This document shows positions 18,278 through 52,200 of a DNA stretch of 64,000 bases, piece by piece. The DNA comes from Ascidiella aspersa (taxonomy: Eukaryota), in contig OZ004609.1 of the NCBI GenBank assembly GCA_963924565.1, forward strand, positions 24,614,001 through 24,678,000. Reading direction: 5' to 3'. The number at the start of each line of letters is the position of its first letter. Position 1 is the first letter of the stretch. The notes below the pieces were generated by a model, which was given only the letters and a program-made list of their open reading frames with translations, was not told where the DNA came from and did no database searches. Both the position numbers and the translations under genes were made by a program.

Positions 18278-19171
18278 CGCGCCGTTCAATTTCCTCTATT
18301 GTCTGGTGCTGGTCTGAAGCCGTTGCGGAATGCGTCGCAGCGGCTACGGCGATGCGGTGCGTCTAAAGACGCCTTTCCTTGGTGCGTAGCTGGATTGTCA
18401 CAGGACAACCTTCGGCATAAACGGAAGTAACGTTCTCGAGTGGGCACAGTTTAATTTTAGTAATGTGTTAAATTTCGTGCCGGCGTCACCGGACAGATGG
18501 CAACGTTCTTTGGCACTTTTTGGCCACACCTTATGTTGCTTGTCCGCTAACCTTCAAAGACAAACAGTTAAATTATAGGATGTATTAATACTTTGCGTCC
18601 ATTTTACGAAAATATGGAAAACAACGGGTTTAAAAAGATTTTACCATTAAGCAGAATGAAAGATGGCAATTAAATATATCTTTACTAAAAATACGTTGAT
18701 TTGCCCCAATCGAAGTACGACAATTATTATTCAATTATTATTGGCAGTAAAGCTCGTGCAAAAATCCATACAAAATGACCTGACACAATGTAATAGTGTT
18801 TTAGGCCTGAACCACACACAATGTAATAGTGTTTCGTCCCTGCAATGTAAAGAGGCCGAAATTAGAGGTAAGAGAATGCACAAATTGGAAAATAACCCCA
18901 CGACCGTGTTTACGAGGAAAGCGGTTTAGGGCGTTTCTCACAACGCCAAGGTATAGCAGTGCCTTGTTTTGTGGTTAGCGGACACCCAAACACCGACAAA
19001 GGAAGTTTAGTGAATGAATCACCACACGAAAACAGCAAAAATGTTTCAGGTTTTAGGTCTTTTCTGCAACTAAGGCAATAAAGCAAACAACCAAGCGAAG
19101 ATTCATATTCTGTTAGTTGATGTGCGATAAAAAATTTATTGCCGCGTTTGTGTTGCAACTGATCCATTTAC

Positions 19172-30695: not shown

Positions 30696-33600
30696 TCAGT
30701 AGCGGATCTTAGAAATGGCGTCGGCACGTCGGTCCGTGTTTTGGAAGAGGGCGCGTATCAGGCCCTTTGCTTCGACCACCGTGAACGAAGCACCCAGGGG
30801 CCCTTTGCCGTCCGCCCACCTAGCACAAAAGCACAATTTTTAAGAAGCGCGTTAAGGTTGAAGGTTCACGGTTCGAATCCCGCCTATATCTAACGTGATT
30901 TCCACGTCTCGTTTATACATTAAAATGTATATCAATTGACAACATATGTGCTCGAAAAATGCGGAAATGGTATGCAGCGATGTTGCAAAGCTAGTTTGTA
31001 TATAAGACATAAATCAGGCCGAGGCGAGTAATTTAAAAGAGGAACTTAAGTGAATTAAATTCAAGTCATGGACTTAGAACACTGGTATAAAGACATTTAA
31101 CAAGAACGTTAACATCGTAAGAAAATGAGAGGTATGTCATCAGAAAATAGTGTGCATCTGAACATGTAAAAGCAAATTACTCGATAGTAAATCTTCTTGA
31201 AACACTAAACGTAACTACTTCTGAGAAGCGTGCTTCGTATTTTAATTTTGCGTGTAGAATATCCCTAAGCGTATTTCTTTGTTCGTGGTTTGAAATCTGC
31301 TAACACGTTTACAAAGCAATGCGGCGGGAAGCAAACGTGTTTAACTTGCCCGGTCTGTTTATCCGTTAAATCGATTCAGCGTAGAAACCTCAGCGTCAGT
31401 GTTGTGACGACTTATAACAATTTGACTTAAGAACACTTTTAATTCACAGTTTCCAAATTACTTGACTAAGTATTTTAGAAAAAATACTTGACTTGACTTA
31501 TATCAATTGGAGAAATGAGCTGACTTGAGCGTAAGTGATTTACGCAATTTACTTTTCTTGAACTGAATACCTTTCAGTAAAGTTGAGTTATTTACGTAAA
31601 ACATCCTAACTTGCTATTTGTGTTGCATTTTATGTTTGCTATGCGAAATATTCAGAATAGACAAAAAGTTTAACATTTATTTTGGAAGACAATAACGCAT
31701 CTTTGGTTTAACCTGTTATGGCAAGACTTGGACTGGGACTATAGACTTGCTGTTCGTTTAAAGCAGGGGTTATTAAACTTGTTTTACCGCGGACCCCTAA
31801 AATTTGTTTTACTTCGCGTGAACCACGGTAGGCAAGGAATTTTAGAGATGACGTCATAAATTAAGATCACAATACAAATAGACTTTATTTTTGAAATAAT
31901 AATAATATTTTATTTTATTTTTTGAAATCTGCTGTTTTCGGTCCAAAAAAGGATAGGTGAAATGAGATCTAAATAATTCAGTGCAAAAGCGTTTTATTTT
32001 TAATTAAGCTCTTTTCTTTGGAAAAATTATTACTTTTGAAATCAACAGTACTATTTGTGATTTAGGCCTTAATGAATCCCCTAAAACTAGTTTACAGACC
32101 CTCAAGGGGTCTATGCCATGGACCTCAGTTTAAGAATCCCTGGTTTAAAGTAAAGTGACTTGACTTTGACTCCTGTTGTGTTCCGATGACTTGACTGTAA
32201 AAAATACTTTTTTAAAAGTGAAACACTTCTCAGCGTTAAACCTGTAGTTACCTGTCCACAATGTCGCGTAGGCTGGCGTCCAGCACGAAGACGAGTTCGA
32301 TGAGGCGCGGCCACTTGCGCAGCGACCTCTGGAAGGGGAAGTTAGCCGGCACCGAATCGTCATCCTCGTCTTCCGGCTTGGCGAAGAGTGCCGGGAGCTG
32401 ATCCCGCAGGATGCAGCAGATCTGGTGGAGGAAGAGAATGGGATGGTTTGAACTCTTTAAGAATCCGGTGGTTCTCACGCTTTTTCAGTGATGGTTTGAA
32501 CTCTTTCAGCTTTTTGGTTCGTTTTTAAATACAAGCAGAGTCCAATGATTCTTACGCTGTTTTAGTGTTGCTACTCTTAATTACCCCTTTGGTAAAACTG
32601 TAAAGTAATGATCCGTGATTAACCTTTAAATAAACAACACCAGATATGTTGACGGTGAAAATAAATAAATAGGTATTTGAAACGTTCAAAATGATACCTA
32701 CTTTAATACTTGATATTGATAACAATTAATAAACGGCGAGTTTTTGATGGATTTTCATATCCCCCATTTTAAAATTATAAAGTTAATGCAGGCCTACAAA
32801 AAACTAATAAATATAGTATAGATTAGAACGACCTAAAACATTGCATTCAATAAAACATTAAAAAGGCTGATGCTACTGCTATTGAAAAAAGCATCTCCTA
32901 TTACTTTCAAATAAAAGTGACACATGTATAGGAACGGCATATTTCAGTGGTTTTGAAATATGTATAGGGACGGAATATTTTAGTGGGTTATAAATACAAA
33001 AGTTTTTACATGAATTTAGGTTTTCCGATTATTTAAACCAGACTATTTTTCTTATAAGTTACATTCCATTTTACCATTAAAGTATATTTCAAACATCACG
33101 TCTTCTTAAATACAGATTAGCGACAGCCGCTTGCTTTAGTCTATTGCTTTTTAATGATCTTGCATTACAATTATATAATATATATGTCATCAAAACTTAT
33201 TTCATTACGCAAAACATTTATTTTGAACTTAGCAATAGGATGGGCGGTACGATTTCCTAGTTTAAGGTAAAACCCGCTAATTTAAGTGCTGGTTATGGAC
33301 CATTAAAGATAGTCAATGGAATTGTGAAGCGACAAAAAACAATGCTGGTCCAAAATCCTGCCACATTTTCGTCCGGGGGTTTATATTGCTAACATTATTT
33401 GGGTTAAGGTGCGAGCTAAGGCTTGGGTTTGGGAGGGTCAAGTTAATGTTATTATCATATTTATTCTCCTATATTTACTTCAAATGTGACAACTCTTTCG
33501 TTAGTGGAAAAAATGTTAGGATTGTAGATCAGAGCCACAACTACACCTGTATAAATCGATAAACCGCATTTGGAAACAAATTCAAACATTTTCTAAACAG

Positions 33601-36600
33601 TAAAGTCGACGGAAAACAAAAGCCTACAACACCCGGTATTCCCAGGCGGTCACCCATCCAAGTACTAACCGGGCCCGACGTTGCTTAACTTCCCAGATCG
33701 GACGAGATGGGGTGGATTCAACGTGGTATGGTCGTAGGCAACGGTAAGCGCGAAATCAATCGCTATATACGCGCGTGGATATCAATTAGGCCAGGAAAAG
33801 ATATTGGTGTAATGTTTTCCGATAAGTACTGTATAAATTTCTAACATTGCTGATTAAAGGCTCGCTACCGTTTCTCTTTTCATAAAAAGCCTTACGGTTA
33901 GAGAAGTTGGCCCAACTAACATCTCTACATTTAAATATTGCCTCCCAAAAAATGCTCTGATTAAATTTTCAATCTTCAAAACATACAAAACGTAGCACAA
34001 CAAAATGAATATATGAAGATTTATCTAATTTCCTTAAAATCACGATTTTTTTTTAGCAAGGAGGCATCAAGACACTTACACAGAATACGTACAGCAACCC
34101 TAACCGAGTATAAACAACGCAACATTTGGACTGGGTTAGCAAAATATCGCGTTCATTGCAGCGGTTTAACACTAAGCAAATTTACTTTTCAAACAGTTTT
34201 TTTTTTCGTTAGATGCAGTATGGGATTTACGTTTTTGCTTGAATTTCGCGCAATTTGAATAAACGATTGGTTCGCAATGCAAAAAGAATTCACAGGGCGC
34301 GATCTTTGTTAGTGTATTATAAAATAAAGCCACTTTAGGTTTAATTATTTTCGGTGCATTTCGGACAGTATGACAAAAATCTATTTCACGGCGTCTCATG
34401 GTGAAAAGTTTAACAAAGTTTGGAGCTGGTCTGGAATCCTGCCACATTTTCGTCCGGGGTTTATATTGCTCACATTATTTGGGTTAGTGTTTGTGTTTGG
34501 GTGGGTTAAGTTATTGTTAATAATATATTTATTCTCCCACATTTTGTAATTTTGATTTTGCCAACTTGTTTGGTTACTGTTAAAAAGTGGTAGAATTGTC
34601 AGAACAGTACCTGTATAAATCGATCAATCGCATTTGAAAACGAATGCGAAAAATAAGTAAGTCGACGAAATACAAAAGCCTACAACACCCGGTATTCCCA
34701 GGCGGTCACCCATCCAAGTACTAACCGGGCCCGACGTTGCTTAACTTCCCAGATCGGACGAGATGGGGTGGATTCAACGTGGTATGGTCGTAGGCAAAGT
34801 TAAGCGCGAAATCAATAGATATATACGCGCGTGGAAATCAATTACGACATACAAAACATATTGGAAATGTTTTCTGCTGAACGTTTTTTAGGTACAGTAT
34901 AAAGTAGGGCTACCATATTTTCAGCACCCAAAATAGGAAAAATTTTTTGCCGGCAAGTAAAACGAAAGTACAATTGTTTCTTTGGAGTTTAATGAAGTTT
35001 TATGCTGATTTTCGGGATGTTTGGTTGTTTTGGGATTCTCGGGTTAATTTTTGATAGGATATTTGGTGTTACTGGCCGACTCAAGCGCAAATATTGATCG
35101 GTTTGTTGTAAATTTTGCGGTTGGCGGCTACAAAGACAGTTACATGGGACGATTTAAAATCCTACGTTTTAAAGTGAATAATCACACAACTTTGCTTTAT
35201 TAATGGGCCTTTTTTTACATGTGAGGTTTGGTTGCAAATTTTCTGGCGCAATGTTTGCAATAACAATCAAGAACAAGGGAGGGCAATTATATTTAACCGC
35301 GGGCCGCATGGGAAACTTTAAATGTTGTGGTGGGCCAGGTCAAAATTAGGATCTCAGATACACGCAATATGACGTCATACTCTAACGCTATAAAACACAT
35401 AAGCTAATGAATTTGTTATTACGTTTGGAGTTGTGCCAAAATGTGCAATTTAAGTCAAAATTTAAGAAAGCCACAAGGCATCGGGGCAAGCGCGAAAAAT
35501 GCGACTATATTGGTTTCAAAATGTAAAGTTTAATTTAGAGTTCAAGGGGGGGCATGACGCATTAAGCACAGAAAAAAAAATATAAGTTGCTTAATATATT
35601 GGCGTTTGCGGTACAACGGCCATATTGCAAAGACGATATAAATGGGGAGAAACACACAACATGACATTAACTAAACTAGGTCGAAAAAATGTGAATCGGT
35701 ATAATGTTTCAGAGTTTAGAAAACGGTCGGTATTTCGTTCAGATTTTAAAGACGGAATACTTTCGACAGAAGCGCAAAAGATATATAAATATTAGACTAA
35801 ATTAGTTAAACTTTCGTCGGAGATAGTGCCACAGTGCAGAAGACGCTATTTGTCAGTTAAGATGCCAAAAATCATGTGAAACATACGAGAAAGACAGAAG
35901 AGATTCGCGCAAATCGCGAAAACAGTTTCCGTTTTAGTATTTAGAACAGGCTTAAAATATAAGTTTGCGGGCTCATGACTAGATCCGTCCCTGGAAAAAG
36001 TGTTTTAGGATACAACCAAACATGTAGAAACTCGTCCTTGTTTTCCCTTGACCTATATGTATTTTAAGGAAAATAAGACAAGGGCCGGATTAAATTGCTT
36101 GGTGGGCCGTATATTGCCCAGGTCTGATAAAAAAGGTAGGGTTGGTAGGGCAATTTATTGGAAAACCTTTTCTAAACCAGCAATTCGGCATGTTTCATGG
36201 CTACAGTATTTTTTTGGAAATAAATACAACGTCTCGCTTAAAAGTATTGTTGAAAATATATGCAACTAACTCCAAATGCGAAAAAATAGGACATTTGGGC
36301 ATTTTTAAGCATCCTCAAAGGACCATTCACTTTTCTTGAGAAAAAAGGACAAATCCTCCTAGAAGAGGACATATGGTAGGCGTAGTAGTATAAAGGTTCT
36401 AACATTACTGATTGAAGGCTCGCTACCGTTTCTCAATTTATAAGAAACCTTTCCGTTAAATAAGATTGCCCAACTAAGATCTAATCGCCTTTTTTTTTAA
36501 ATTGCTCTGTGATAAAATGATCAATCTTAAAAATATACACAACGTCGCACAAAAAATGAAGATATATATAAGTTCCTTTAAATATCGATTTTTTTTAAAG

Positions 36601-39600
36601 AGTCATAGTTCCTATCGTCGTGAGGTCATGAGAAAATATTAAAACGACTCGCTAAAATAATTCACAGGGCGAAATTGTTAGTTTATTATATAAGTCATTT
36701 TAGGTTTACCGGTAATTCTTTTCCGCACATTTCGGACAGTACGGCAAAATTCTATTTCACGACGCCCTAGGATTGTGCAATAGCGCCAAAACTAAACATG
36801 TGTAAATCGATTAATCGCATTTAGAAAAGAATTTAAACATTTTCTAAACAGTAAAGTCGACGGAAAACAAAAGCCTACAACACCCGGTATTCCCAGGCGG
36901 TCACCCATCCAAGTACTAACCGGGCCCGACGTTGCTTAACTTCCCAGATCGGACGAGATGGGGTGGATTCAACGTGGTATGGTCGTAGGCAAAGGTTAGC
37001 GCGAAATCAATGGCTATAGACGCGCGCGTGCATCAACTACGCCAGACATATTATATCGGTTGTGTTTTACGTTTACGTCTAGGTGTAAGCTTTCTAAGAT
37101 TACTGATTTAAAGACTTGCTAGTGTTTTTCATTTTATATGAAACCTTTCGGAAGTTTGCCCAACTAAGATCTATTTTAAATATCGCCTTCTTAAAAAAAA
37201 ATACTCTGTGGTCAAATGATTAATCTTTAAAACATACACAACGTCGCACAAAAAAATGAATTTAGGTTCCTTTAAATTTCGATTTTTTTTTAAAGAGGTT
37301 TAGTTCCCATAGTCGTGAGGTCATGAGAAAATATTAAAACGACTCGCTAAAACGAGTTGGAAAGGAGAATTCACGAAGCACGGTCGTTGTTAGTTTATTA
37401 TGAAATATAAGCCATTTTAGCTTCAATTGTTTTTGGTACATTTCGGACAGTATGACAAAAATCTATTTTACGGCACCTAATGGCGCAATCAAGACACGCT
37501 GTGACCTTTCCATAAAACATGACATCGTACTGTTCGACTGAAATCTTTTTCGCGATTAACAAAACAAAGTTTGGCTCTGGTCGAGAATCCTGCCACATTT
37601 TCGTCCGGGGGTTTATATTGCTAACATTATTTGGGTTGAGGTGCGAGATAAGGCTTGGGTTTGGGAGGGTCAAGTTACTGCTATTATCATATTTATTCTC
37701 CTATATTTACTTCAAATGTGACAACTCTTTCGTTACTGTAAAAAAATGTTAGGATTGTAGATCAGAGCAACAACAATACCTGTATAAATCGATAAACCGC
37801 ATTTGGAAACAAATTCAAACATTTTCTAAATAGTAAGTCGACTGAAAACAAAAGCCTACAACACCCGGTATTCCCAGGCGGTCACCCATCCAAGTACTAA
37901 CCGGGCCCGACGTTGCTTAACTTCCCAGATCGGACGAGATGGGGTGGATTCAACGTGGTATGGTCGTAGGCAAAGGTAAGCGCGAAATCAATGGCTATAT
38001 ACGCGCGGGTATATAACAATTAGGCCAGACAAACACTATTGGTAGTTTTCCGTTGACGTATAAACATTTTAACATTACTGATTTAACGCTATATAGTCAC
38101 TAGTGTTTCTCATGTTATAAGCAACCTCTCGATTAAAGAAGTTATCCCAACTAAGACCTACATTTTTAAATATTGCCTATTTTAAAAAATGTTCTGTGAT
38201 CAAATGTAAATTTTCAAAAACATATAAAAATTTATTTTATTTCCTTGAAATCTCGAAGTATTTAAAGAGTCATAGTGCCCACGGCCATGATGTCTTAAGA
38301 AAATATTAAAACGACTCGCTAAAACGAGTTGGTTAGCAATGCAAAAAATAATTCACAGGGCGCGACCGTTGTTAGTTTATTATAAAATATAAGCCATTTT
38401 AGGTTTAATTGTTTTCGGTACATTTCGGACAGTATGACAAAAATCTATTTCACGGCACCTGATGGTGCAATCAAGACACGCAGTGACCTGGCCGTAAAAT
38501 CATGATCTCGTACTGTTCGACTGAAATCTTTTTCACGTTTAGGAAAACAAAGTTTGGCGCTGGTCGAGAATCCTGCCACATTTTCGTCCGGGGGTTTATA
38601 TTGCTAACATTATTTGGGTTGAGGTGCGGGCGCGATCTTTGTTAGTGTATTATAAAATAAAGCCACTTTAGGTTTAATTATTTTCGGTGCATTTCGGACA
38701 GTATGACAAAAATCTATTTCACGGCACCTTATGGTGCAATCAAGACACGCAGTGACCTGGCCGTGAAAACATGATAACGTAATGTTCGACTGAAATCTAT
38801 TTCGAACTCACGTTTAACAAAGTTTGGAGCTGGTCTGGAATCCTGCAACATTTTCGTCCGGGGTTTATATTGCTCACATTATTTGGGTTAGTGTTTGTGT
38901 TTGGGTGGGTTAAGTTATTGTTAATAATATATTTATTCTCCCATATTTTGTAATTTTGATTTTGCCAACTCGTTTGGTTACTGTTAAAAAGTGGTAGAAT
39001 TGTCAGAACAGTACCTGTATAAATCGATCAATCGCATTTGAAAACGAATGCGAAAAATAAGTAAGTCGACGAAATACAAAAGCCTACAACACCCGGTATT
39101 CCCAGGCGGTCACCCATCCAAGTACTAACCGGGCCCGACGTTGCTTAACTTCCCAGATCGGACGAGATGGGGTGGATTCAACGTGGTATGGTCGTAGGCA
39201 ACGGTAAGCGCGAAATCAATCGGTATATATGCGTGTTGATGTTAATTAGGCCAAACAAAATATATTGGTAACTAGACGAAATACCCGGCGTTGCCCAAGT
39301 TAAATAGGGTATCTACTTTTTACTTGTAACAATTAATAAACATTTGCAGTAGGCGGTATGTATTATGTGCATTCGTGCAATGCCCGATTTTGCGTGGTAT
39401 TGCAGGTAGCAAAAGACGTTCTTGTAATTTAGCGTAGCCCTGTACACGGAACTTAGTAAACTGTGCTGCTGCTGATAGTCGAATTATGATATAAATCAAT
39501 CACACATATTTCACGGTCTTGGTTTAGTTTTTCGCCTATGTTAACGATTGCACACTAAGCAGTTTCGCAGCTGGCACCTGGCAGGAGTTTTGACAACGCA

Positions 39601-42600
39601 TTGTTCGCTTTGCGTCTTACGGTTTGCTTTTGCTGTATACGTTAATTGACTCTTTCTGGTTAGTTTTTTTCAATTTATGACGTCATTAAAATCACTATTT
39701 TATGAGGTCATGCCTGTCACTATTTTTATTTTGACTGCCGGATCGAAGTACCAAGTTCGGAACCGATAATGCCGCACACTGCAAATTGTAAAGGTGGGAT
39801 AGCTTTGGGTGAGTGAAGAAAGGCAAAAGAGATTAAGCTTACCAACTGCAGCATACATTTACGTTTAGTCTAAACACGACCATGCTGCCGCTGTGCATGC
39901 TTACGGCTTGTTGCTACACACATCAATAAATCACTATTATTAGAACGCTAATATAAATAGCAAACTATTAAATCTCTTCACCTACGTTATGTTTTGACGA
40001 TATTTTCTCGCCCTTAGGAGGCATTGTAGTTTGATCGTAAATAGCTTTGACATTGCTTTGCGCCGTTACTGACCGCAACTATGCAAATGTAACTAATTTC
40101 AGTTTATCCACTGCCATGCTGATTTAAGACTATTGATAAAATTCGGCACTCATGCGCTAATCAGCCGAAAATTTATTTTGACAGATATTAGACAAAATTA
40201 CGGATTTTAAACTTAAAAGCACGTGTTTTGTCTTTCATTAGGGGGTACGCCATAAATGCAGCTATGTCAAAAGGGTAGGCAAGTAAAAAATGGAAAACCA
40301 CTGTTTTAATCCCAGCTCAAAATACCGCGTGGCGTGGCTGCGCTAAAAGAGTATCAACCAAAGAAAAAACTTACAGTTTTTAGCTGAACAGAATCGTCCG
40401 AGGTGATGTCTTCCATGGAACACACTGAGTTGACCACTTCGCCGATAGCGGAGTCGACGAGTGCCGAAAGACTGCGCATGAACATCGGTAGCGGAAGGAC
40501 ACCACGCCAGACCTTGCGCAGATGATGCAGCTGGTACATGACCTGACGGAGAATGGAATCAATATCGGGTTGATGTTGTGCTTTTACGGAAAGTGCACCG
40601 CGGGCAAGCAACGTATTATAGTACAAATTTAAACTTTTGAGTCATCATTGAGAACTTGCGCACGCGTAGAAGCGACGATTTGGAATCGCCTTTGGTGTGG
40701 GTAAAACTTGCTTACAAACCACCTGGAACTATCTCTGTTTCTGCATATCTCATAGTCGCGCTGTCTTGGAATTCAGTTTTTCAATAGCTCATACCAGTAT
40801 TTCTAAAAGTTGTACAACATTCTTGCGCTATAGGCTACATGAATACAAGTAAACTAACAGTTTCCTCTTTGTGTAAGAAAAACAAAGATGTATGGAGTTT
40901 CGGGAGCATATGGTTTAAAGGTGTGTTAGCTAGACGTAGAATAAATATTTAAAGCCCTACACAACTATATAGCACTGTGTAAACGTTTTTAACAGTTTAA
41001 ATTTTACCACGTTATTTGAGGCAGACAATAATTGTTAAGTATAGCCCGTTAAAAAAGGAATAAACACCAAACAGTTATACGAAATGTTAGAATGCTATCA
41101 ATTTCCAGTATGGGCTTTGATGTGTATTCTTCGCCTAAATCCCTAATTCTGTCCTATTTTATGTTTTTCTGGTAAGTGTAAAACATATAGTGCGTGAAAA
41201 AATTTTTTAAATATTTTTAGATTTTCTTAAGCATCACCGTAAACTATAAGTAACAAACGTTTGTTTGAACGTGTAGTGGACTGTTCAAAACACTTATGCT
41301 TCTAAAAGAGATAGTTAATGCTGTTGTTTGATACATAGTCATTAACAGCCGTTTGAAATTTGGTAAGATAATCATAATAATGTCCCCTAGCATAAAACTC
41401 TTTTCAAGTAATGTGCTTATGAAAGACCAGACCAAGCGATAGGTTTGACTCACGTGCGCAGTTTAAAAGATAACCATAGAAACCTGTTTGATTGGCTTTT
41501 CGGCCATCTGATACTTGTCGGCGTTCGTGTTGGTGGCGAAGTTTTTCAACGGCGAAAGGTACTCGACAATGACGTTTCGCTGTCGTCTCATCTGGGCAAG
41601 AAAGCAATCTTCGCCTGGGCGGAAAGTAGAACAATGTTTGTTCCAGTCACGGTGAGAGAGCAATCGGCCAATAATTGAAGCGTTTTAAGTAATTTCCACA
41701 AATAACCCACAACAGAAAGGTGTCCGAGATTTTGGATTGAAAAAACACGACACTTTTACACGATATGGCAAATGTACGTACTACCAACTCGCGTCTTTTT
41801 GTTTTTATTTGCGGTAAAGCTAGTAAAAAGTAAAATAATCTACAGCTGATGCTGAAAAAATCTTAAGCCTTCGACTGCACCAATTTTGACACTATGATCA
41901 CATTTTAAAGACGATCAATTAGTCGCGCAAAAAAAAATTTAATGAGAATTATTTTGCATTTTTTTTATTCAAGATTTTTAATAATCATGGGACAAGTAAA
42001 TCGATAGCGCATTAATACTTAGGAATAGGGGGGGTCACCTACCTAGTTTTCGTAAAGGTTGAACTTGTTGAACGAAAGTCAAGTCTGCGCTCTTGACCAT
42101 GGACGGTAACCTAGTGGACAGCTGCTGACCCATGGTCAAGAGATGGTGGGCAATGTAGTAGCAGTTGTTGTGGTGGACGGCGGACACTTGCGGCAAACTT
42201 TCCAACGCGTCTCTGTAACAACAGAATAATTAAAACTGTTTGACCTTGAATAAATTAAAACTGTTTGACCTCGCCTATATTTACATTTTAAATGCTTTTG
42301 CTAAATGACAGCGTTGGAAACTGGCCATTTTGTAGTGATTCAAGTTCAGGCCACATCACCATGCAATACAATAATTTTATATCCGGGAAACATTTTCTGG
42401 TCTAGAATCTTTCCACTTTTGTAACGAAACGAGTTGCAAAAAATTGCAGGAAATATTAAATGTTATAACAATATTTGACCTACACTAACCTAAATAATAA
42501 TGTTTGCAAGAAAATGTAGTAGTAGGTTTCTAGACCAGCATCACATTTTCGGCTTATGTTAAGGTAGTCTAAAACAAACAATAGCTTTCCAAATTTACTT

Positions 42601-45600
42601 TTGACGTAAATAACAGGTTTAGGTTTTCAAATAGTAAAAATTCATTTTTCAGTTTATTATATTATTAAAAATGAACTTTTTACCCTGTAAAGCGCAAAAG
42701 CCTACAACACCCGGTATTCCCAGGCGGTCACCCATCCAAGTACTAACCGGGCCCGACGTTGCTTAACTTCCCAGATCGGACGAGATGGGGTGGATTCAAC
42801 GTGGTATGGTCGTAGGCAAAGGTAAGCGCGAAATCAATCGGTATATACGAGCGTACATATCCATTTTCCAGACGCAATAAGTATCATCATAGTACAGGGG
42901 AGGGCAATCTGCGGCTCGCTAGCATGTTTGTTGTGGCTCTTCTAATCGAATCATTAAATGCCCAAAAAATTGTAAAGGCTACCAAGATAATTATTAAAGT
43001 TTCTCTATTTTTCTTTTCTTTATTTAGGCCAGCATTTTGTTTATGACGTAACACTAGAAATAGAATACGAAGAGTTAGTTAACAACAAGTCAACTGAATT
43101 CCATTGCTAAGGTTTCAGAGATTAGCAAATCAAACAAAAATTATTTCTGCAAATGGCTCTTCCAATGAATACATTTGCCCACCCCTGCCATAGTATTTAT
43201 CGTTTATATGCTAGTGTTTCTAAAACATTTGTGAACCAGGGCAATTACTTCGCAAACTTGTAAAACCCTGTACTAATTGCGATTTAAATATGTTTTAAAT
43301 GACAAAAATAAATGTATTTTAAATATTGAAGTATGGTAGAAATTGCGGACCTTGCTGATATATCTTTAACAAGTTTTAAAAACGGTACACTTAATAACAT
43401 GCCCAATTAGAACAGAGTCAATATGTTAGCTATCAGGTTTCCAACGCAAATTTGGCAGCATCCGGCTATAGTAATATACCATACATTAGGTTTCGATAAC
43501 CGACGCCAAATTGAACTTTCGTTTGGTTAAATATCTAACATTCTCGATATTTGTGTGGCCGGGAGTACCGTGCCCTGCCACCTCATAACACTAACAGAAA
43601 GACCTACGAAAATAAAATTCATTGTAGATTCCTCTTTTCATGATCTGCACTACTCAGACGTGTTTTGCAATAATAGTTTGCCATCGAATCGTAAACAAGT
43701 AACAACGCGTCATTTACATATAATATCTAGCAAAAATATTTCCACAGATCCTTGTCAAACTGTAAAAGTATTTGAACACTAGCCCAGATAACAATATAGC
43801 GCTTGATCAATTGGATAACTATTGCCATCTGACTTTGAAATCATGAACATTTGTATGGAAAATATAAATTAAAAACTTCAAAATTATTAAATACTTTTAA
43901 AATTGACTAAAGCAACTCACCTGTGAAAATTTGGTACATCGGATTGAAAGTGCTCAAAAATTTCATCTATCGTAACGATCAATCGCATGGCGCTGAAAAA
44001 AATAAAAATCGCATTCAATAAGAAATTCCAAAATTTTTCAATTAGTAAGTCGACAGAAAACAAAAGCCTACAACACCCGGTATTCCCAGGCGGTCACCCA
44101 TCCAAGTACTAACCGGGCCCGACGTTGCTTAACTTCCCAGATCGGACGAGATGGGGTGGATTCAACGTGGTATGGTCGTAGGCAACGGTAAGCGCGAAAT
44201 CAATCGCTATATACGCGAATTGCTATGCGTCGTGGTTACGGCAAACCAAGTAACTGGGAGCTATGTAAATCTAGATAACTATTTGTATTACGAGTCGCAG
44301 ACACGGCTATAGTATGCCGCAGTACAACTTTAAATATTAGGAAAACATTTCTTTTATTTTCTACAGAGAAAACATAACAAACGTAAAGTGTTCCATCAGT
44401 GGTTAGATATTAACTGTTTTTTAGTGCTTAAAATTGGCATTTTTTTGTTTAAAGAGCTTGGCGTTGTTGAGGCATCTTTTTAATTTTGCACTTGTTTGGA
44501 ACGATGTGTCGATCAAACCATGTTTTACTCGTTATGTGCGATACCGTATTCCCTATGTATTTTTATTTCGGTTGCTATATCGAGTTTAGGCGAAATGGAT
44601 CGCTTAATTATATATATTTTCTAGTGTTGTAAACAAGTAAAGTCCAAGTCAAGAATAAGTTAATTACAAATGAAATATTTTCGAAAAAATAACAAGTCAA
44701 GTCCCAGTCCAGTCATGTCAACTTTCATTGACGTAACAAATAAAACTATAAACTATATTAATAGACAACAAGCAATTTATTTTTCGTGCAAAAATTTAAA
44801 TCAATTACCCAACTGTATTAAAAATATTGATTGAAAACACTTAATTTTAGCTTAAGTTATTTGACAGAAAGACATAAGTAAGTCCATGTCAAGTCATTTT
44901 GGCCAAAAGACTGAAGTCTCAAGTCAAGTCATTTGACAAAAGTGAAGAGCTCTAAGTCAAGTCACAAGTCATAACAACTGTGATATTTTGTAACTGGTAA
45001 CAACAATGGTTTTGGTTTTGGACTCCATAAAGATACGCCCTTTTAGATAAGTTTGAGATTTTTGGGAAAGAGTATGGGTAGAGAAACATATGTTAACCAA
45101 CTAACGAAAGGCCTAAGATGCCTAAAAATAAAATAATTCTACTTTCTACACTACATGTTTCAGTACACGTACAGGCAGATCTGGAAGCCACACTTTATTA
45201 AATCCGGATATTTTTGATCAAACAAAATCAAAGAAACAAACAAGCAAAATTACTAAACGTTATACACTCACCATTCGGAGCTGGCGGTCATGGCTTCGTA
45301 CAAAGTTTCGTAAACGAGAGAGACCAACTCCAGTGTGCTTGTGCTAACTCGACATCTGAACAGACAGAAGGTGAGATATATGCTGTATATGCTTTAGCCC
45401 TGGGTTTAAACATAGATGGGAACCTGTACCTACGAACTATTTCCAGACATATTTTATTTTCATATTTTATTACAACTGTTTGAACATCTTTGTTTATTTA
45501 TGTTATTGAGTATGAATCTTTCTTTCGCAAATCTAGCATCCCAAAAGCGTTATTAGTCACTACTTTCTGATTAATAACGAAATGCATTTTTTCTAGTAAT

Positions 45601-48600
45601 TGTTTTGACGCAACACCTTTGCATTCTGTTGGAGACCCTGAGATTTAATACCGTATAAAGTGCTGTTGGGTAACAAATGTTGCTGTTGGTAGTTTTGTGG
45701 TTTAAAAACTGGTCATCAAACACGATGTGAAACTACAGCAGTCGTGCGACAACATGGAGCTCGATCTTACTTTGTTTCATTAACGCTTGACGAACATAAT
45801 TGTTGTCAATAAAAGCCAGCAAGTCGACGTAAACAAACACAGTTCGCTATACAGTGGATTGTTCAATAAGACCTGATTAACTCTAATCAATACAAAATCA
45901 TATTCCCAGGCAGCCACGCATCCAAGTATACTAAAGACTTTTTCGGCCCGCCACAACATTTTATGTTTCTCATGCGGCCCGCGGTAAAAAAATAATTACA
46001 AAGATCAAACGCGAACATTGTTACTTTATCATTAATTTAAACTTTTTGAGGTTTATTGCTCGTTCGTACATAGACTATACTCCTATATATTGTGGAAGTC
46101 TGGCTGTGAACTAAAACAATAATTGTGCTGTTTAACTGACATATTTAAAAATTCACTTACTGTACAGTTTTTAAAAGGCGTAAAGCTGAAAATCCATTTA
46201 TCTTGTTTTCAATAAAATAGCCCTTTGCTTTGCGAGGGGCAAAAGCCTACAACACCCGGTATTCCCAGGCGGTCACCCATCCAAGTACTATCTGGGCCCG
46301 ACGTTGCTTAACTTCCCAGATCGGACGAGATGGGGTGGATTCAACGTGGTATGGTCGTAGGCAACGGTAAGCACGAAATCATTCAGTATATACATGCGTA
46401 AAGCGTGTTTTGCGAGACGGAAAAAACTGTCGTCATAGTAATTGACGTTTTTATACCATCAGTTATTCTCAATAGTAATTTAAATCAGGTCCCAACTGGT
46501 ATTACAACCAGGATTCAACACGTTATGGTCGCAGGTGAAGGTACACTGTAAAGCAAACCTTCTATAGGGCTGACTATCGACGAACGCGTGGTGTATATAC
46601 AGATACAGAGGTTTAATAGCATAATGTGTTTAATCGGAATTGCCACACACATACACACACACACACACACGGAGTTTTGATTTAGTGTTTATATTTGATA
46701 TAAACGATACTTTTTACTTTCAAGTAAACACTAAACTAATTTTAAAGAGAAGTAACATACCTTTTGTCACATTATATAGAAAGCATAAAGCCGCAATCAA
46801 ACATTAAGCTGCCAAGTTTAGCATTTTAGCTTTGTGTACAGTTTCCCGCGAGAAAAGGGAGAACAAAATTAGATTAGCCTAACGTAAATAATATGGATTA
46901 ACCAAAAACAAACATGTGTTTTAAAGTTATAATCCGAAATTCAGCTTCGGGGTAGATACTAAGAACTCCATACATAATATACTGCCGGTCAATTGTTCTT
47001 CACAAAGCGGACATGTGGGGTAGTCAAACTTGACATGACCGTATACGTGTAATTCCACGAGCCCAATCAAACATTTAACTCACTGTTTCTCGGCCTTTTA
47101 TGGCTAGCGGCACCCCTTAGAAATTAAAAATTGATTGCAGCACCCATACAAGATTTCCGTAGGCAATTCACTAGAATGTCACCATAAACGGAACTGGAAC
47201 AACATTCATTAATTCTACACAACGTAGGAAGTTAAAATTGGGTTTATTCCACTCTATTCTTACACAAAAAGTTGTAGGAGTTGAGCAAAAATTAGAGTCT
47301 TAAAAATTCCCAGAAAAGTCGCGGCACCCGTAAGGATTAGAAAGTTGAGAACCACTGATTTAACTGGTCAGCATTTCGCGTGTGTTTAACACTTACTTGG
47401 GAAACAATAAAACATCCTGGGCATTTTCTTTAGGTTGGCTGGCGGCGGGGGCAGCAGGGACAACTATCTGGTCACTTGACTCTTTCTTTATTTCTCCCAT
47501 TATCCGAGAGAAGAAACTGTCGACATCGCCTTTTCCGCCGTCCGTTATCTATACAATATTACAAAAATTACCACATCTGGAGACCAGAGAGTTGCTTAAA
47601 CCTATATATTTTTTTACATTTAAAGTTAAATCAGAATACTATGAGTTTATTGAAATCAAAAGTGGTCATGCATTTGAGTATTAAATACAACCAACCCGAA
47701 ATCGAATAAACTTTAACAATTTATTTGCATGAGTGGCGTTAGAAGTATATCACTGCCCGGCTGTGGCTTGACTTCACACTTCACCAATTTTAATGAACTG
47801 TTTAATTTTTTTTCTGAAAGCACTTGCTACAGTTAAGAAATTTGACTGCTTACAGCGATAAAAAACAAGGAAATCATTAGGCGTACTAAAGTTTCGCTCA
47901 CCGGGCTTGTTTCGTGTATTTCCTTCTTCATGATGGACCTTGCTTTTCCCATGATGGCCGTACATCGACGGTTTGCAAAATGCACGTGAATGTCCGACAC
48001 GTAAGCCAACAGGCCACCTACAAATGGGAAAGACAAAGCTACAAAAAGTCTAAGGAACATGGCACATAGCAGATGAAACTACTAACAGCTTTGGAGCATT
48101 GTTGAGCATGGGTTTTGGTAAAATTGACGAACATGGAGACGTTTTATTTCTATGTCTATGAGATCGATGTTATTGTAATTCATACCACGGTTAGTGGTGC
48201 TACACTTGAAAGTCCACCTAGAGAGGGAGGTCTGACACAATATATTTCTATACCACGGCTAATTTAAAAATTAGACGACGTCTTTAAAAAAGTAAAACAC
48301 ACAAAATAGACAAATCAAAACATAAAGCTATCGGTTTCTGGGGATTGGGACAAAATTTGCTTTTGTATTAAAAATATTAAACTTGATTGTTAAGTCCATG
48401 TTCTTATAAACAAACACAGCGTTGGATTGCAAACAATTGCTAAAATGCACAAATTAATACGGTTTCATACCGGCACCTAACACTAGCAGTGGACATAAAG
48501 TAAACATAAACTTACCGGGGTTTTCGGGCAAGAAGTGGATACTTTGTAGTGCCGATTCAAACTTTGCAACCACCTCGACAATCTAAACACATCCATGAAA

Positions 48601-51342
48601 TGTTTCGCTTGGTTACTTAGTAGTAGTTTTTCTCACATGACAAACCAATGGTTACCTGGTCGTAAGCCTCAAGTTGTTCTTTAGAGTCGGGCACAGATTT
48701 CTCCAAACACTCGTCAACGAGAAGGGTGATTGTGTCTTCACATATCACAGGAGCGAACAAGGACATCAGGGTTTCATCTAAAAAAGGTAAGATTGGGTTT
48801 GCCTGTTTTACTTGGTCAACTTGGTCAAGAGATTTAAATAAAATCTTCCACTGAACAGGTAGATGACAAAAACATATATTTTTTACAGATTTGCAAAAAC
48901 AAAAATAAACCTCCTACTCTATCATAAAATTTTAGAAAAAATAAAATTCAAAAGGATCACCTTTATCTGTTTGTATTTTTAGCTTTAAAAAGTTGTCATT
49001 GAGAAATCTTAGTACTTCCCACACTTTGTTAAAGACCCCTTCTGGTGAGAATTTCTGTTAAAAACAATTACGCATTTGTTCTTTTATAAAAATACGGAAA
49101 ATCAAAAGTATCAATATTATATAATTAAATAAAAGAATAATAAATTATCTAAAGTGAACAACTATTTGTGGTCAGTGTAAACATCGCATTTGTTTAGCTT
49201 GCACATGTTTTGCCTTTAACTTCTAAACTGCTATTGTATGGCAAACAAACTAAATGGTTTCTTTTAAAAATGACTATTTAGACAGGTATACATATAAATA
49301 AAAATCTGAAGAGAAAATTGTTTAACACACCTGTTTTGACTCATTGCTTTCATTAGTTGGAAGCACAACCGCACCATGTTGCTTAATACAAATGACATTG
49401 CAGTGTGGTAGAGCTTGGGTTTCAGGTTGAACATTTGGATTTTTGATTAGAGGGATCAGAATGTTGTTTAAAAACATGTTGGCTGCAAAAAATAGATCAT
49501 ACATTTCAATCCAAATTTTAGAATGATGTCTGCACATTAGATAAATATTCCTTAAAAAAGACATTCCAACAGGAACGTAATACTACTAACAGGTTGGCCA
49601 GAAAATTGATTAATGTTTTAATACACAATTTTCAAATATATTATTTACAATACCCAGTTTTTGCGTTCGTAATCCAAGAGCTTTACACGATTGCATGGCA
49701 AACACAATGTCTTGAGCAGAGAGCTTTTCTTTTTGATTAGAAAAGTCTAAGCTGAGCTTTGTGCTAAAACCATCAGTTTTGTCATCTATCAGAAAAGACA
49801 ACAATAAACAAATATTTGTTATTTTAATACGTCTAAATATTAGCCTAAAATACTGGCACTAAAAGTTTAACAAAATTCATTCTGCAAATATGTACTGAAA
49901 ACTGAAATACCATGGATGTGTTTAAGTAGCCAGTATTTGTTCAAATAACACTACCATTAAATGTAGCAGGAAGATTCCATACAATGCACTTGTCCCAGAC
50001 CTCGGTAAGCACATAAATAAGATTTTCCTGACGGACTGTCACCTCCACACACAAAGTTTTGTATATTTCTGTGTCTCCAAGAGAATCATGTTTCACAGAA
50101 TTTAAAATGTCCTTTATCTACATAACAACACAGATTGCAAAAATCATGGTTACTATTTTTAATCGTTTTTTTTTCTAAATATGAATAATAGAATTAGGTA
50201 CTTAGTTTAGGTTATACGTTATATTTTATAATACATCATTATGTTCCAAATAAACAAAACAACTATCTTATAATGCAGAACTTTGTTAAATTTAAAACTG
50301 TACTAATATTGTTCCAGCATATTTTGAGTTTACATATTTCTTAAATTATTTTTTCCACAAATTCTTACAAAATATCAAAAAACAATTTTAACTCACTTCT
50401 TTTATGGCAGTGGAAGTTTCACAAAACTGCTGCTTTTTCAAACTACTGTCATAAGTGTCAAGGAATGTGTGGACACTATACAGTTTTTCTAAGGCAAACA
50501 CAAGTGCGGATGTTTTAGCATGTTGAAGAGAAAGCTGTTGGAACTCGCTGTTAGCATCTTGCAACTGTTGGGTTGCCTAAGCATAAACAAATAGTTCATG
50601 AGTTATCACCATTACAGCAAACAGGTATTTATGTCAATAATTTAAAACATGAAAGTTAGAATAAACAATCAAAAAGAATCATTGTTATGAAATTTGAAAT
50701 TTAAAACTTAGAAACTGCTATATGTGCAGTTTGCCACATGGGGAATAAGCTGGCAAACTTAGAACATGTATTAATCCAACCAACATTATTTTGTATATTT
50801 TTCATCTTACATACTAGGTGTGTTAAGCATTTTATAACTTTCTAATGGTGCATTACATAACAAATTGTATGTTCTGAAGAGCACTTTATGTAGATTTAAA
50901 TTGTTTTACAACATACATAATATATATATACATGTAATAGTCTTACCATGCTCTCCAGTGAGTTTTGTAAGTTTTCCGCATCGAGTTTCACTTGTGAAAG
51001 CTTCTCATCAACCTTTTCTGCTGTTGACTGCAGGAGGAGAAATTCTCCGTAAGAACGCTCAATGAAATCATTAAAGTCTCTCTGCAACAAAAATAGCAAT
51101 GTTTTATCTCAAATTAGTTTAGTGTTTTAGCATTTTATATATATATGTTTGTTGATTCCTATTTTAGACAAAGAACTGTTTCATTTTATACATATATATA
51201 ACGATATACAATAATCTATATGAAACATTTTTTCAACCTTAATCTCCAGAGCGCGAGAATTAAGTTTGGTTATTTTTGTGTTCCAATCATCTTTAGCAAG
51301 TTTTCCTGCGGAGGAAAGCACCTCACAAACCAATGAAGACAT
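30696..51342 (-). CDS. ZW10: Centromere/kinetochore protein ZW10 (RZZ and NRZ complexes), 18 exons, 778 aa
   Basis: Exons: 51342-51238, 51081-50947, 50576-50397, 50117-49955, 49785-49654, 49482-49331, 49054-48961, 48777-48656, 48582-48516, 48017-47902, 47548-47397, 45355-45272, 43992-43921, 42212-42043, 41614-41484, 40542-40375, 32421-32252, 30819-30696; all GT-AG, 2337 nt in frame. Recognised ZW10 motifs: [66 protein letters not shown]...[13 protein letters not shown]. Confidence 0.97.
31764..32142. mobile_element. hAT-type MITE nested in a GACTT-rich repeat (ZW10 intron 17)
   Basis: Termini CAGGGGTTATTAAACT / AGTTTAAGAATCCCTG; perfect 8-bp TSD GTTTAAAG; GACTT-rich sequence continues on both sides. 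Confidence 0.88.
33345..33532. mobile_element. Small inverted-repeat element (MITE-like) in the 5S spacer
   Basis: Termini CTGGTCCAAAATCCTGCCACATTTT / AAAATGTTAGGATTGTAGATCAG around a GGGTTA-like core; further copies at ~34426-34602, ~37577-37764, ~38560-38627 (truncated), ~38830-39006; solo relative at 42397-42538. Confidence 0.6.
33621..33739 (-). rRNA. 5S rRNA, copy 1 (ZW10 intron 16)
   Basis: Reverse complement reads GCCTACGACCATACCACGTTGAA...GTTAGTACTTGGATGGGTGACCGCCTGGGAATACCGGGTGTTGTAGGCT (119 nt), followed by a TTTTGTTTT Pol III terminator. Confidence 0.98.
33764..33769 (-). promoter_or_regulatory. TATA-like element at -25 to -30 of 5S, conserved upstream of all eight copies
   Basis: Minus strand CGCGTATATAGCGATTGATTTCGCGCTTACC directly precedes +1; close variants lie at the same spacing before every copy. 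Confidence 0.7.
34677..34795 (-). rRNA. 5S rRNA, copy 2
   Basis: Identical to copy 1 by eye; oligo-T terminator present. Confidence 0.98.
34905..36384. mobile_element. Non-autonomous hAT-like element inserted in the 5S spacer, carrying a nested element at ~35274-36125
   Basis: Termini TAGGGCTACCATA / TATGGTAGGCGTA; GTATAAAG on both flanks (right copy offset by 3 nt); spacer homology resumes after it. Inner termini CAAGGGAGGGCAAT / ATTGCCCAGGTCTG. Confidence 0.7.
36872..36990 (-). rRNA. 5S rRNA, copy 3
   Basis: Identical to copy 1 by eye; oligo-T terminator present. Confidence 0.98.
37853..37971 (-). rRNA. 5S rRNA, copy 4
   Basis: Identical to copy 1 by eye; oligo-T terminator present. Confidence 0.98.
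39081..39199 (-). rRNA. 5S rRNA, copy 5
   Basis: Identical to copy 1 by eye; oligo-T terminator present. Confidence 0.98.
39270..39310 (+). mobile_element. Possible Helitron/Helentron-type terminus truncating the 5S spacer
   Basis: AACTAGACGAAATACCCGGCGTTGCCC resembles non-autonomous Helentron ends; spacer homology stops abruptly here. The other end was not identified. Confidence 0.4.
42397..42538. mobile_element. Solo MITE-like element related to the 5S spacer element
   Basis: Termini CTGGTCTAGAATC / GTTTCTAGACCAG, with a CCTACACTAACCTAA core in the opposite orientation to the spacer copies. Confidence 0.6.
42699..42817 (-). rRNA. 5S rRNA, copy 6 (ZW10 intron 13)
   Basis: Identical to copy 1 by eye; TTTT terminator; unique downstream flank. 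Confidence 0.98.
42895..43187. mobile_element. hAT-type MITE
   Basis: TIR CAGGGGAGGGCAA / TTGCCCACCCCTG; 8-bp flanks TCATAGTA / CCATAGTA. Confidence 0.85.
44065..44183 (-). rRNA. 5S rRNA, copy 7 (ZW10 intron 12)
   Basis: Identical to copy 1 by eye; ends about 70 nt before the exon-13 splice acceptor. Confidence 0.98.
44622..44980. repeat. AAGTC/GACTT-rich interspersed repeat
   Basis: Starts TAGTGTTG, contains many CAAGTC units, ends CAACTG; same family as 5080-5433 and 31397-32200. Confidence 0.55.
45900..45931 (-). pseudogene. 5S rRNA relic (box C region)
   Basis: TATTCCCAGGCAGCCACGCATCCAAGTA versus intact TATTCCCAGGCGGTCACCCATCCAAGTA. Confidence 0.7.
46244..46362 (-). rRNA. 5S rRNA, copy 8, variant (G70A, U72A; ZW10 intron 11)
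   Basis: Full length; plus strand reads TACTATCTGGG instead of TACTAACCGGG. Confidence 0.93.
46511..46543 (-). pseudogene. 5S rRNA relic (5' end plus upstream flank)
   Basis: GGATTCAACACGTTATGGTCGCAGGTGAAGGTA versus intact GGATTCAACGTGGTATGGTCGTAGGCAAAGGTA. Confidence 0.65.
47081..47357. mobile_element. hAT-type MITE
   Basis: Termini CACTGTTTCTC / GAGAACCACTG; perfect 8-bp TSD ATTTAACT. Confidence 0.85.
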
Positions 51343-51987: not shown

Positions 51988-52200
51988 TTAGTCGCTTTTG
52001 ATGTAGGTGACTTCTTTGCCAGACTTTTTCAGCATTTCGGTTAAAGCTTCTACGCTGAGATCAGAATCAATCGAAACTAATTTATCTTCCAAATTTACAT
52101 CGAATTTTGAAGTGTCCCCAATTTTCTTTGTGAGAATTCTTGTTATCGCTGATGAACAGCCACTGCAGGTCATTTCAACTTTGAAAACTTGTTTCGGCAT
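51988..52200 (-). CDS. ATOX1: Copper transport chaperone ATOX1 (HMA domain), 70 aa, intronless CDS
   Basis: MPKQVFKVEMTCSGCSSAITRIL...LKKSGKEVTY: MxCxxC metal-binding motif and C-terminal KK(S/T)GK motif of the Atx1/ATOX1 family. Confidence 0.95.
   Translation of the reverse strand: MPKQVFKVEMTCSGCSSAITRILTKKIGDTSKFDVNLEDKLVSIDSDLSVEALTEMLKKSGKEVTYIKSD

What the first reader, a model, noticed from the sequence alone, without database searches (positions are those of the whole stretch)
33621..46543. A 5S rDNA locus inside the introns of the essential kinetochore gene ZW10
Seen: eight full-length 5S genes and two relics spread over four ZW10 introns (five in the ~8-kb intron 16, one each in introns 13, 12 and 11), all on the ZW10 strand. 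Seven coding regions look identical while their flanks diverge, and helix III has a compensatory pair (CCCA/UGGG instead of the common CCGA/UCGG). Known: 5S genes usually sit in dedicated arrays or are linked to histone, snRNA, SL or 45S repeats. Inference: these are selected, homogenised Pol III genes nested in a single-copy Pol II gene and interleaved with its exons. Co-orientation would avoid head-on polymerase collision, and 5S sequence would also be present in ZW10 pre-mRNA.
Basis: partly seen in the sequence, partly recalled or inferred. Interest (0 to 1): 0.85.

Follow-up and report, generated by a model that had tools for sequence, protein, structure and literature searches.

The report
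5S rRNA genes inside ZW10 introns
Eight intact 5S ribosomal RNA genes lie between the exons of a sea squirt's single-copy ZW10 gene, but they are one of several such intron-nested clusters in a genome that also has a very large separate 5S array, so the arrangement is real and unusual without being specific to ZW10.

Summary
Rfam finds eight full-length 5S genes on the minus strand. Seven are identical over 119 nt, and two decayed relics score above chance. All lie in four introns of an intact, single-copy ZW10 gene on the same strand. Flanks of the tandem copies differ by 15-21% while the coding parts are identical. A ~35-nt upstream module with a TATA box at -30 and a T4 terminator is kept in all eight. 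This points to independent, selected Pol III genes spread by DNA-level duplication, not retroposition.

The interpretation needs correcting in three ways.
- This is not the genome's 5S locus. It holds 8 of 28 copies of a dispersed class found at seven loci.
- A dedicated 183-bp tandem array on another contig holds at least 7,600 units of a second 5S class. That class differs by 14 positions, including three fully compensated pairs.
- At least two other clusters also sit in introns (IFT122 and a DPP-like gene), there as head-to-head pairs, so co-orientation is not a rule.

The layout resembles the maternal/somatic 5S systems of zebrafish and Xenopus. The scan had already noted the upstream module and the DPP-like cluster elsewhere in this genome.

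The parts
33621..33739 (-). 5S rRNA gene, dispersed class, copy 1 of the tandem group in the large intron
   Evidence: RF00001 116 bits; identical 119 nt; TATA module at -30 and a T4 run after the gene
34677..34795 (-). 5S rRNA gene, tandem group in the large intron
   Evidence: RF00001 116 bits; identical
36872..36990 (-). 5S rRNA gene, tandem group in the large intron
   Evidence: RF00001 116 bits; identical
37853..37971 (-). 5S rRNA gene, tandem group in the large intron
   Evidence: RF00001 116 bits; identical
39081..39199 (-). 5S rRNA gene, tandem group in the large intron (first copy met by ZW10 transcription)
   Evidence: RF00001 116 bits; identical; starts 1,175 nt after the donor at 40375
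42699..42817 (-). Solitary 5S rRNA gene in the intron between exons 43992-43921 and 42212-42043
   Evidence: RF00001 116 bits; shares only about 171 nt with the other copies: the gene, 48 nt upstream and 4 nt downstream
44065..44183 (-). Solitary 5S rRNA gene in the intron between exons 45355-45272 and 43992-43921; it ends 72 nt before the acceptor
   Evidence: RF00001 116 bits; sequence read; its downstream flank is homologous to the array spacer up to the acceptor CAG
46244..46362 (-). 5S rRNA gene with two substitutions (G70A, T72A) and the most diverged promoter; possibly decaying
   Evidence: RF00001 110.8 bits; differences; G70A breaks pair 70/105 (structure); 7-14 mismatches per 40 in the promoter
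46511..46578 (-). Relic: decayed promoter module plus the first 26 nt of a 5S gene
   Evidence: Local alignment score 24, shuffle maximum 19, 0 of 300 shuffles reach it; blastn
45891..45934 (-). Relic: decayed 3' part of a 5S gene (positions 72-115)
   Evidence: Local alignment score 24, 0 of 300 shuffles reach it; blastn
32422..40374 (-). 7,953-nt ZW10 intron holding a degenerate tandem 5S array (units of 981-2,195 nt)
   Evidence: Self-comparison: spacers 77-97% identical; flanks show 15-21% mismatches; boundaries from the splice model
34100..34262 (.). Copy of a genome-wide interspersed repeat of about 165 bp, inserted in one array spacer
   Evidence: Matches at 84-91% identity on many contigs, 1,514 first-look candidates; the rest of the spacer matches only this locus
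30699..51342 (-). ZW10 gene, 16 coding exons. The 3' exons are 47548-47397, 45355-45272, 43992-43921, 42212-42043, 41614-41484, 40542-40375, 32421-32252 and 30819-30699. The 5' exons are approximately 51342-51238, 51081-50947, 50576-50397, 50117-~49950, ~49858-49649, 48850-48656, 48582-48516 and 48017-47902.
   Evidence: Pfam ZW10_C, ZW10_C2 and Zw10_middle; tblastn with 12 ZW10 orthologues; splice phases all consistent; the model aligns end to end with amphioxus ZW10 P0006, E 1e-146 (name); the ZW10_C exon is single-copy in the genome

Best explanation
The eight units are independent, functional RNA polymerase III 5S rRNA genes of a low-copy dispersed class (28 copies at seven loci). They lie in four introns of the intact, single-copy ZW10 gene.

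Inferred mechanism, from the established type-1 Pol III pathway: TFIIIA and TFIIIC bind the internal control region. TFIIIB/TBP is positioned by the conserved upstream module with its TATA box at -30. Transcription ends in the T4 run directly after the gene.

Shown by sequence: the cluster arose by DNA-level duplication of the gene together with its promoter. One tandem group of five copies formed in the large intron, with short-range seeding of minimal units into three neighbouring introns. The coding part has since been kept invariant by purifying selection, probably helped by gene conversion, while spacers drifted and took up repeat insertions. One edge copy and two relics show birth and death of copies.

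ZW10 is a passive host and one of at least three such host genes. Its pre-mRNA necessarily carries eight sense 5S sequences, which are removed with the introns. The 5S class in these introns is most likely the constitutive or somatic supplier of 5S rRNA. The huge, heterogeneous tandem array on another contig is either an oocyte-type reserve or a decaying 5S-derived satellite.
For: - Full-length RF00001 matches at 110.8-116 bits, with 33 of 34 model pairs canonical.
- Seven of the eight copies are identical. Genome-wide, 22 of the 28 class copies are identical even though flanks between loci cannot be aligned.
- Flanks of the tandem copies show 15-21% mismatches. At 15% divergence, the chance that one pair keeps 119 nt unchanged is about 4e-9.
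- The -35 to -1 module is conserved in all eight copies. A TATA-like hexamer lies at -33 to -26 in 23 of 28 class copies, against 10.7% of background windows.
- A T4 run follows every copy.
- The shared non-transcribed promoter and the absence of A-tails argue for DNA-level spread.
- The ZW10 model is intact and phase-consistent, and the gene is single-copy.
- Other intronic clusters sit in IFT122 and in a DPP-like gene.
- The array class has at least 7,641 units in 183-bp repeats. Its monomer variation ignores the RNA structure: 461 changed pairs are broken against 192 kept, and the substitution rate is equal in paired and unpaired sites.
Against: - There is no expression or Pol III occupancy evidence.
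- Identity of the coding part could be kept by gene conversion from active copies elsewhere, without these copies being transcribed.
- The array-class consensus is itself a good 5S sequence (up to 112 bits). It is separated from the dispersed class by compensated pair changes, so it may supply much or most of the 5S rRNA.
- Whether the intronic position is old or recent is unknown, because no related ascidian locus could be fetched.
Confidence: 0.7

Rival explanations
1. The intronic copies are silent or nearly silent passengers. Their coding parts are kept identical only by gene conversion from active dispersed copies elsewhere, and ZW10 merely tolerates them.
For: 22 of 28 copies are identical across loci with unalignable flanks, which fits concerted evolution. 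One copy and two relics in the window are decaying.
Against: The non-transcribed -35 to -1 module and the terminator are conserved in all eight copies, while sequence beyond them has drifted until it can no longer be aligned. Conversion tracts limited to the coding part would not preserve the promoter.
Confidence: 0.15
2. Nearly all 5S rRNA comes from the large tandem array on contig C4. The dispersed intronic class is a minor or stage-restricted variant with little share in ribosome supply.
For: At least 7,641 array units against 28 dispersed copies. The array consensus scores up to 112 bits and keeps the structure through compensated changes. In the array unit the 5S part is more conserved than the spacer, 93% against 77%.
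Against: Array monomers vary by about 6-7% per site with no regard to base pairing. There are 93 distinct sequences among 159 monomers. No T4 run occurs until about 19 nt after the gene. The pattern looks like higher-order repeats, which is typical of satellites.
Confidence: 0.2
3. The interleaving of 5S genes and ZW10 exons is an assembly artefact.
For: Repeated identical 119-nt units can mislead assemblers. The copy number in the tandem group could be wrong.
Against: There are no gaps in the window. Every copy has its own distinct flanks. The exons lie in the correct order with fully consistent splice phases across the 5S-bearing introns. The same kind of nesting occurs in two other genes.
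Confidence: 0.03
4. The copies are 5S-derived SINEs or retroposed pseudogenes scattered at random.
For: Copies occur on six contigs and in both orientations.
Against: There are only 28 copies at seven loci. They share upstream, non-transcribed promoter sequence. They have no A-tail, no tRNA-like or LINE-like tail, and are full length with a terminator.
Confidence: 0.03

Closest known systems
Maternal (oocyte) versus somatic 5S rRNA gene systems of zebrafish and Xenopus (PMC5340908)
   Same: There are two sequence classes. One has thousands of short-spacer tandem units on one chromosome, many of them variant. The other has a few dozen or fewer copies with long, unrelated spacers. The class differences fall partly in the internal control region.
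   Different: Here the low-copy class is spread over seven loci and sits largely inside introns of protein-coding genes. Stage-specific expression is untested. The organism is a tunicate, not a vertebrate.
Dispersed 5S rRNA genes of the tunicate Oikopleura dioica, often in inverted repeats and linked to the SL RNA gene (PMC8008620)
   Same: Both are tunicates, with a few dozen 5S genes scattered over the chromosomes. In this genome, inverted head-to-head pairs occur at the C9 and C2 loci.
   Different: The ZW10 copies are all direct and not paired. Rfam found no SL RNA gene next to them in the window. Nesting in introns is not described in that paper, and this genome also has a huge tandem array.
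Pol III genes nested in introns of Pol II genes, for example intronic tRNA genes in nematodes and mammals (general knowledge; see also PMC3509611 on intronic Pol III units)
   Same: A short, self-contained Pol III unit with its own promoter and terminator lies inside an intron and is removed from the host transcript by splicing.
   Different: The nested genes here are 5S rRNA genes, in clusters interleaved with several exons of the same host. My searches of the paper library found no description of this.
Dispersed 5S genes with upstream TATA elements in fungi such as Neurospora and fission yeasts (general knowledge); scattered 5S genes of Yarrowia lipolytica (PMC2566860)
   Same: The 5S genes are scattered rather than arrayed, and an upstream TATA box near -30 accompanies the internal promoter.
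   Different: Those genes are intergenic and in fungi. Here they are animal genes, intronic, and co-exist with a tandem array.

Membership tests
5S ribosomal RNA gene (Rfam RF00001) | Full-length match to the covariance model above the gathering score | tested here: met
   110.8-116 bits against 38, model positions 1-120, all eight copies
5S ribosomal RNA gene (Rfam RF00001) | Five-helix structure kept by canonical pairs | tested here: met
   33 of 34 model pairs are canonical. The unusual C31-G46 pair is a compensated version of the consensus G-C.
5S ribosomal RNA gene (Rfam RF00001) | Pol III terminator (T run of four or more) at the 3' end | tested here: met
   The last gene base plus TTT gives T4 in all eight copies, and the same holds at all other dispersed-class loci.
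5S ribosomal RNA gene (Rfam RF00001) | Transcribed by Pol III and incorporated into ribosomes | not testable with these tools
ZW10 (kinetochore RZZ / NRZ tethering complex subunit) | ZW10-specific Pfam domains in the right order | tested here: met
   ZW10_C 61.4 bits (cut-off 25.8) and ZW10_C2 48.5 bits (cut-off 27). Zw10_middle scores 20.2 bits, below its cut-off of 23.6, on a single exon.
ZW10 (kinetochore RZZ / NRZ tethering complex subunit) | End-to-end similarity to named ZW10 orthologues, with an intact reading frame | tested here: met
   The exon model of about 748 aa has no stops. It aligns over 1-747 to 1-781 of amphioxus ZW10 (E 1e-146) in a local script only.
Retroposed 5S pseudogene / 5S-derived SINE | Copy limited to transcribed sequence, with an A-rich tail and target-site duplication | tested here: not met
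   Homology extends 31-48 nt into the non-transcribed promoter and stops at or shortly after the terminator. No A-tail is present.
Classical tandem 5S rDNA array | Many head-to-tail units of uniform length with homogenised spacers in a dedicated locus | tested here: not met
   The window has five units of 981-2,195 nt with spacers 77-97% identical, plus three solitary units, all inside a gene. The genome's real array is on C4: 183-bp units with at least 7,641 hits.
Dual maternal/somatic 5S system | Two 5S classes with fixed differences and contrasting copy number and spacing | tested here: met
   14 consensus differences, including compensated pairs 31/46, 67/108 and 68/107. There are 28 dispersed copies against at least 7,641 tandem copies.
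Dual maternal/somatic 5S system | One class expressed in oocytes, the other in somatic tissue | not testable with these tools
   No RNA reads were available.

The most novel reading that the evidence does not exclude
This ascidian runs a two-tier 5S system like that of zebrafish and Xenopus. A megabase-scale tandem array would serve oogenesis. About 28 invariant, TATA-driven genes would serve somatic cells. Most of the somatic genes would live inside introns of ordinary protein-coding genes (ZW10, IFT122, a DPP-like gene), so Pol III units and Pol II host transcription share the same DNA. That would place dual 5S systems outside vertebrates and give a natural model for Pol II/Pol III interference.
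Probability: 0.35. Interest if true: 0.7.

Novelty: new variant of a known kind. Interest (0 to 1): 0.55.

Why it matters
5S genes are textbook examples of dedicated tandem arrays. Here the copies that look most strongly selected are scattered in small clusters between the exons of housekeeping genes, while the classical array looks partly decayed.

If the intronic copies are the working somatic genes, this genome offers three things:
- a compact natural system for asking how Pol III units and their bound factors co-exist with Pol II elongation and splicing (one copy ends 72 nt before a 3' splice site);
- a case for studying how dispersed copies stay identical;
- a test of whether maternal/somatic 5S specialisation predates vertebrates or arose twice.

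If they are not expressed, the finding reduces to an ordinary case of tolerated intronic repeats.

Tried and rejected
- **Reads.** Expression and assembly remain untested.
- **Related species.** Two metagenome scans with the ZW10_C exon were run. The first found nothing. The second found 69 loci, none closer than 51% identity on the whole exon (a few short partial matches score higher).
- **5S near ZW10 elsewhere.** None of the metagenome loci scanned with Rfam (L097, L096, L050, L093, L113) has a 5S gene. A 54-nt blastn match in L096/L097 is not supported by Rfam.
- **Sampling the C4 array further.** I used a pattern count instead.
- **Host genes of the three small loci.** For C5, C6 and C3 30.15 Mb, Pfam on the ten longest ORFs gave only weak hits: a C-type lectin, a nesprin-like spectrin repeat, or nothing. 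These hosts are undetermined.
- **SINE reading.** Rejected, as set out under the rival explanations.
- **Relics as two halves of one split gene.** Considered and dropped, because positions 27-71 are missing and no clean insertion boundary is seen.
- **Weak Rfam hits.** The snoZ105-like and SCARNA7-like matches in the window are far below their gathering scores and are taken as chance.
- **Joined ZW10 model.** The joined exon model was built only inside a script, for the stop and phase check and a local blastp. External searches were done exon by exon, by reference.
Full report
**What is in the window.** A gathering-threshold Rfam scan finds exactly eight RNA genes in the 64-kb window, all 5S rRNA. 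All are full length (model 1-120), all are on the minus strand, and they score 110.8-116 bits against a threshold of 38. Seven are identical over 119 nt. The copy at 46244-46362 carries G70A and T72A, and the first of these breaks a pair.

A permissive scan finds no further 5S. Local alignment does find two decayed pieces on the same strand: the promoter plus the first 26 nt at 46511-46578, and positions 72-115 at 45891-45934. Each beat all 300 shuffles.

**The host gene.** Single exons on the minus strand match Pfam ZW10_C (61.4 bits), ZW10_C2 (48.5 and 23.5 bits) and Zw10_middle (20.2 bits). A search of protein representatives with the ZW10_C exon returned full-length ZW10 proteins, named in their sources for amphioxus, Saccoglossus and a nemertean. 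tblastn with twelve of them marks the exon cores.

Splice-site and phase analysis gives one stop-free chain of 16 coding exons from 51342 to 30699. Its 3' half is unique and fully phase-consistent. The joined model was built only inside a script. There it aligns end to end with amphioxus ZW10 (E 1e-146). The ZW10_C exon occurs once in the 308.6-Mb assembly.

The 5S genes lie in these introns:
- 47396-45356: the 46244 copy and both relics.
- 45271-43993: the 44065 copy.
- 43920-42213: the 42699 copy.
- After two 5S-free introns, the 7,953-nt intron 40374-32422: five copies.

The 44065 copy ends only 72 nt before the acceptor of the next exon.

**Anatomy of the copies.** The five copies in the large intron form a degenerate tandem array with units of 981-2,195 nt and spacers 77-97% identical. 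Part of one spacer (34100-34262) is a copy of a genome-wide interspersed repeat of about 165 bp. The rest of the spacer is specific to this locus.

The three solitary copies share only 155-215 nt with the others: the gene, 31-48 nt upstream, and 4 to about 60 nt downstream. All eight keep a module of about 35 nt upstream with a TATATA box at -30. All eight are followed by a T4 run.

Between array units the flanks show 15-21% mismatches, yet the coding parts are identical. At 15% divergence the chance of one pair keeping 119 nt unchanged is about 4e-9. Homology that includes the non-transcribed promoter, together with the lack of A-tails, excludes retroposition.

**The rest of the genome.** A whole-genome RF00001 search and two class-specific pattern counts show two 5S classes.

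The window's class has 28 copies at seven loci:
| Locus | Copies |
|---|---|
| C3, ZW10 | 8 |
| C9, ~6.75-6.77 Mb | 9 |
| C2, ~10.71-10.72 Mb | 6 |
| C5 | 3 |
| C6 | 1 |
| C3, 30.15 Mb | 1 |

Of these, 22 are identical in sequence, although flanks between loci cannot be aligned beyond about -35. A TATA-like hexamer lies at -33 to -26 in 23 of the 28, against 10.7% of background windows.

The second class forms a 183-bp tandem array on contig C4. Three sampled 10-kb stretches gave 161 RF00001 hits, with 91% matches between units. At least 7,641 pattern hits run from 23.38 Mb to beyond 24.02 Mb.

Its consensus differs from the dispersed class at 14 positions. Pairs 31/46, 67/108 and 68/107 are changed on both sides, so both lineages evolved under structural constraint. 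Within the array, however, variation ignores the structure: 461 changed pairs are broken against 192 kept, and the rates in paired and unpaired sites are equal. There are 93 distinct sequences among 159 monomers, and no T4 run follows the gene for about 19 nt.

So the ZW10 locus holds 29% of the invariant class but about 0.1% of all 5S-like units.

**Other hosts.** The C2 cluster lies between exons matching the IFT122 beta-propellers and TPR domain, on the plus strand. On C9, head-to-head pairs lie between exons matching DPPIV_N and Peptidase_S9 of a DPP-like gene, on the minus strand. This confirms an earlier first-stage note.

In both, the 5S genes face both ways, with 99 nt between the members of a pair. 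At least 18 of the 28 dispersed copies therefore lie between exons of protein-coding genes. Co-orientation with the host is peculiar to ZW10. There it rests on about four independent placements, which is not significant.

**Interpretation.** The sequence evidence fits independent type-1 Pol III genes helped by an upstream TATA element. They were spread by local DNA duplication, are held invariant by selection and probably gene conversion, and show some birth and death at the cluster edge. The steps involving TFIIIA, TFIIIC and TFIIIB are inferred from the established pathway and are not shown here.

The contrast between thousands of heterogeneous short-spacer units and a few dozen invariant long-spacer genes matches what is described for maternal and somatic 5S in zebrafish (PMC5340908). 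Dispersed and inverted 5S genes are known in the tunicate Oikopleura (PMC8008620). Draft ascidian genomes list only 7-32 5S loci (PMC5006418). My searches of the paper library found no description of 5S genes nested in introns.

**Limits.**
- The organism is a sea squirt only according to an earlier follow-up note, which I did not verify independently.
- Expression, Pol III occupancy, assembly confirmation and conservation in related species therefore remain open.

Noticed in passing
G000:C4:23377656-24021125 (loci L031-L033 sampled): A megabase-scale tandem array of 183-bp units, each a 5S-like gene plus a 64-nt spacer. It has at least 7,641 units, 91% matches between units, and repeated score patterns that suggest higher-order repeats of about 2.4 kb. 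It is either an oocyte-type 5S array or a 5S-derived satellite.
   Followed up: partly
G000:C1:19039380-19040906: A small plus-strand cluster of about eight array-class 5S units, spaced about 184 bp apart, lying away from the main array.
   Followed up: no
window 39199, 42817, 44183, 46362 relative to donors at 40375, 43921, 45272, 47397: In all four 5S-bearing introns the first 5S gene starts 1,034-1,175 nt after the donor site, although the upstream flanks are unrelated. This was noticed after the fact and may be chance.
   Followed up: no
window 43993-44064 and the array spacers, e.g. 33541-33620: The flank downstream of the 44065 copy is homologous to the array spacers right up to the acceptor CAG of exon 43992-43921. 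Each array unit in the large intron therefore carries an acceptor-like TTTATACAG.
   Followed up: partly
window 14195-18289 (-): An open frame of 1,364 aa, G+C-rich and rich in Ser, Pro, Ala and Gln, with no Pfam match. It is probably a large exon of a disordered protein. A similar 497-aa frame lies at 10863-12356 (-).
   Followed up: partly
window 51991-52254 (-): A small open frame with a heavy-metal-associated (HMA) domain, resembling an ATX1-type copper chaperone. It lies about 650 nt upstream of the ZW10 start codon on the same strand.
   Followed up: partly
L097:10325-10378 and L096:3307-3360: In two metagenome contigs, a 54-nt stretch 78% identical to 5S positions 37-90 lies about 150 nt downstream of a ZW10_C-like exon. 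Rfam finds no 5S gene there, so this is probably chance or a fragment.
   Followed up: partly
G000:C9:6755630-6755966 and similar pairs on C9 and C2: Head-to-head 5S gene pairs are separated by 99 nt, so the two genes share one short divergent promoter region. This resembles the inverted 5S repeats reported for Oikopleura.
   Followed up: partly
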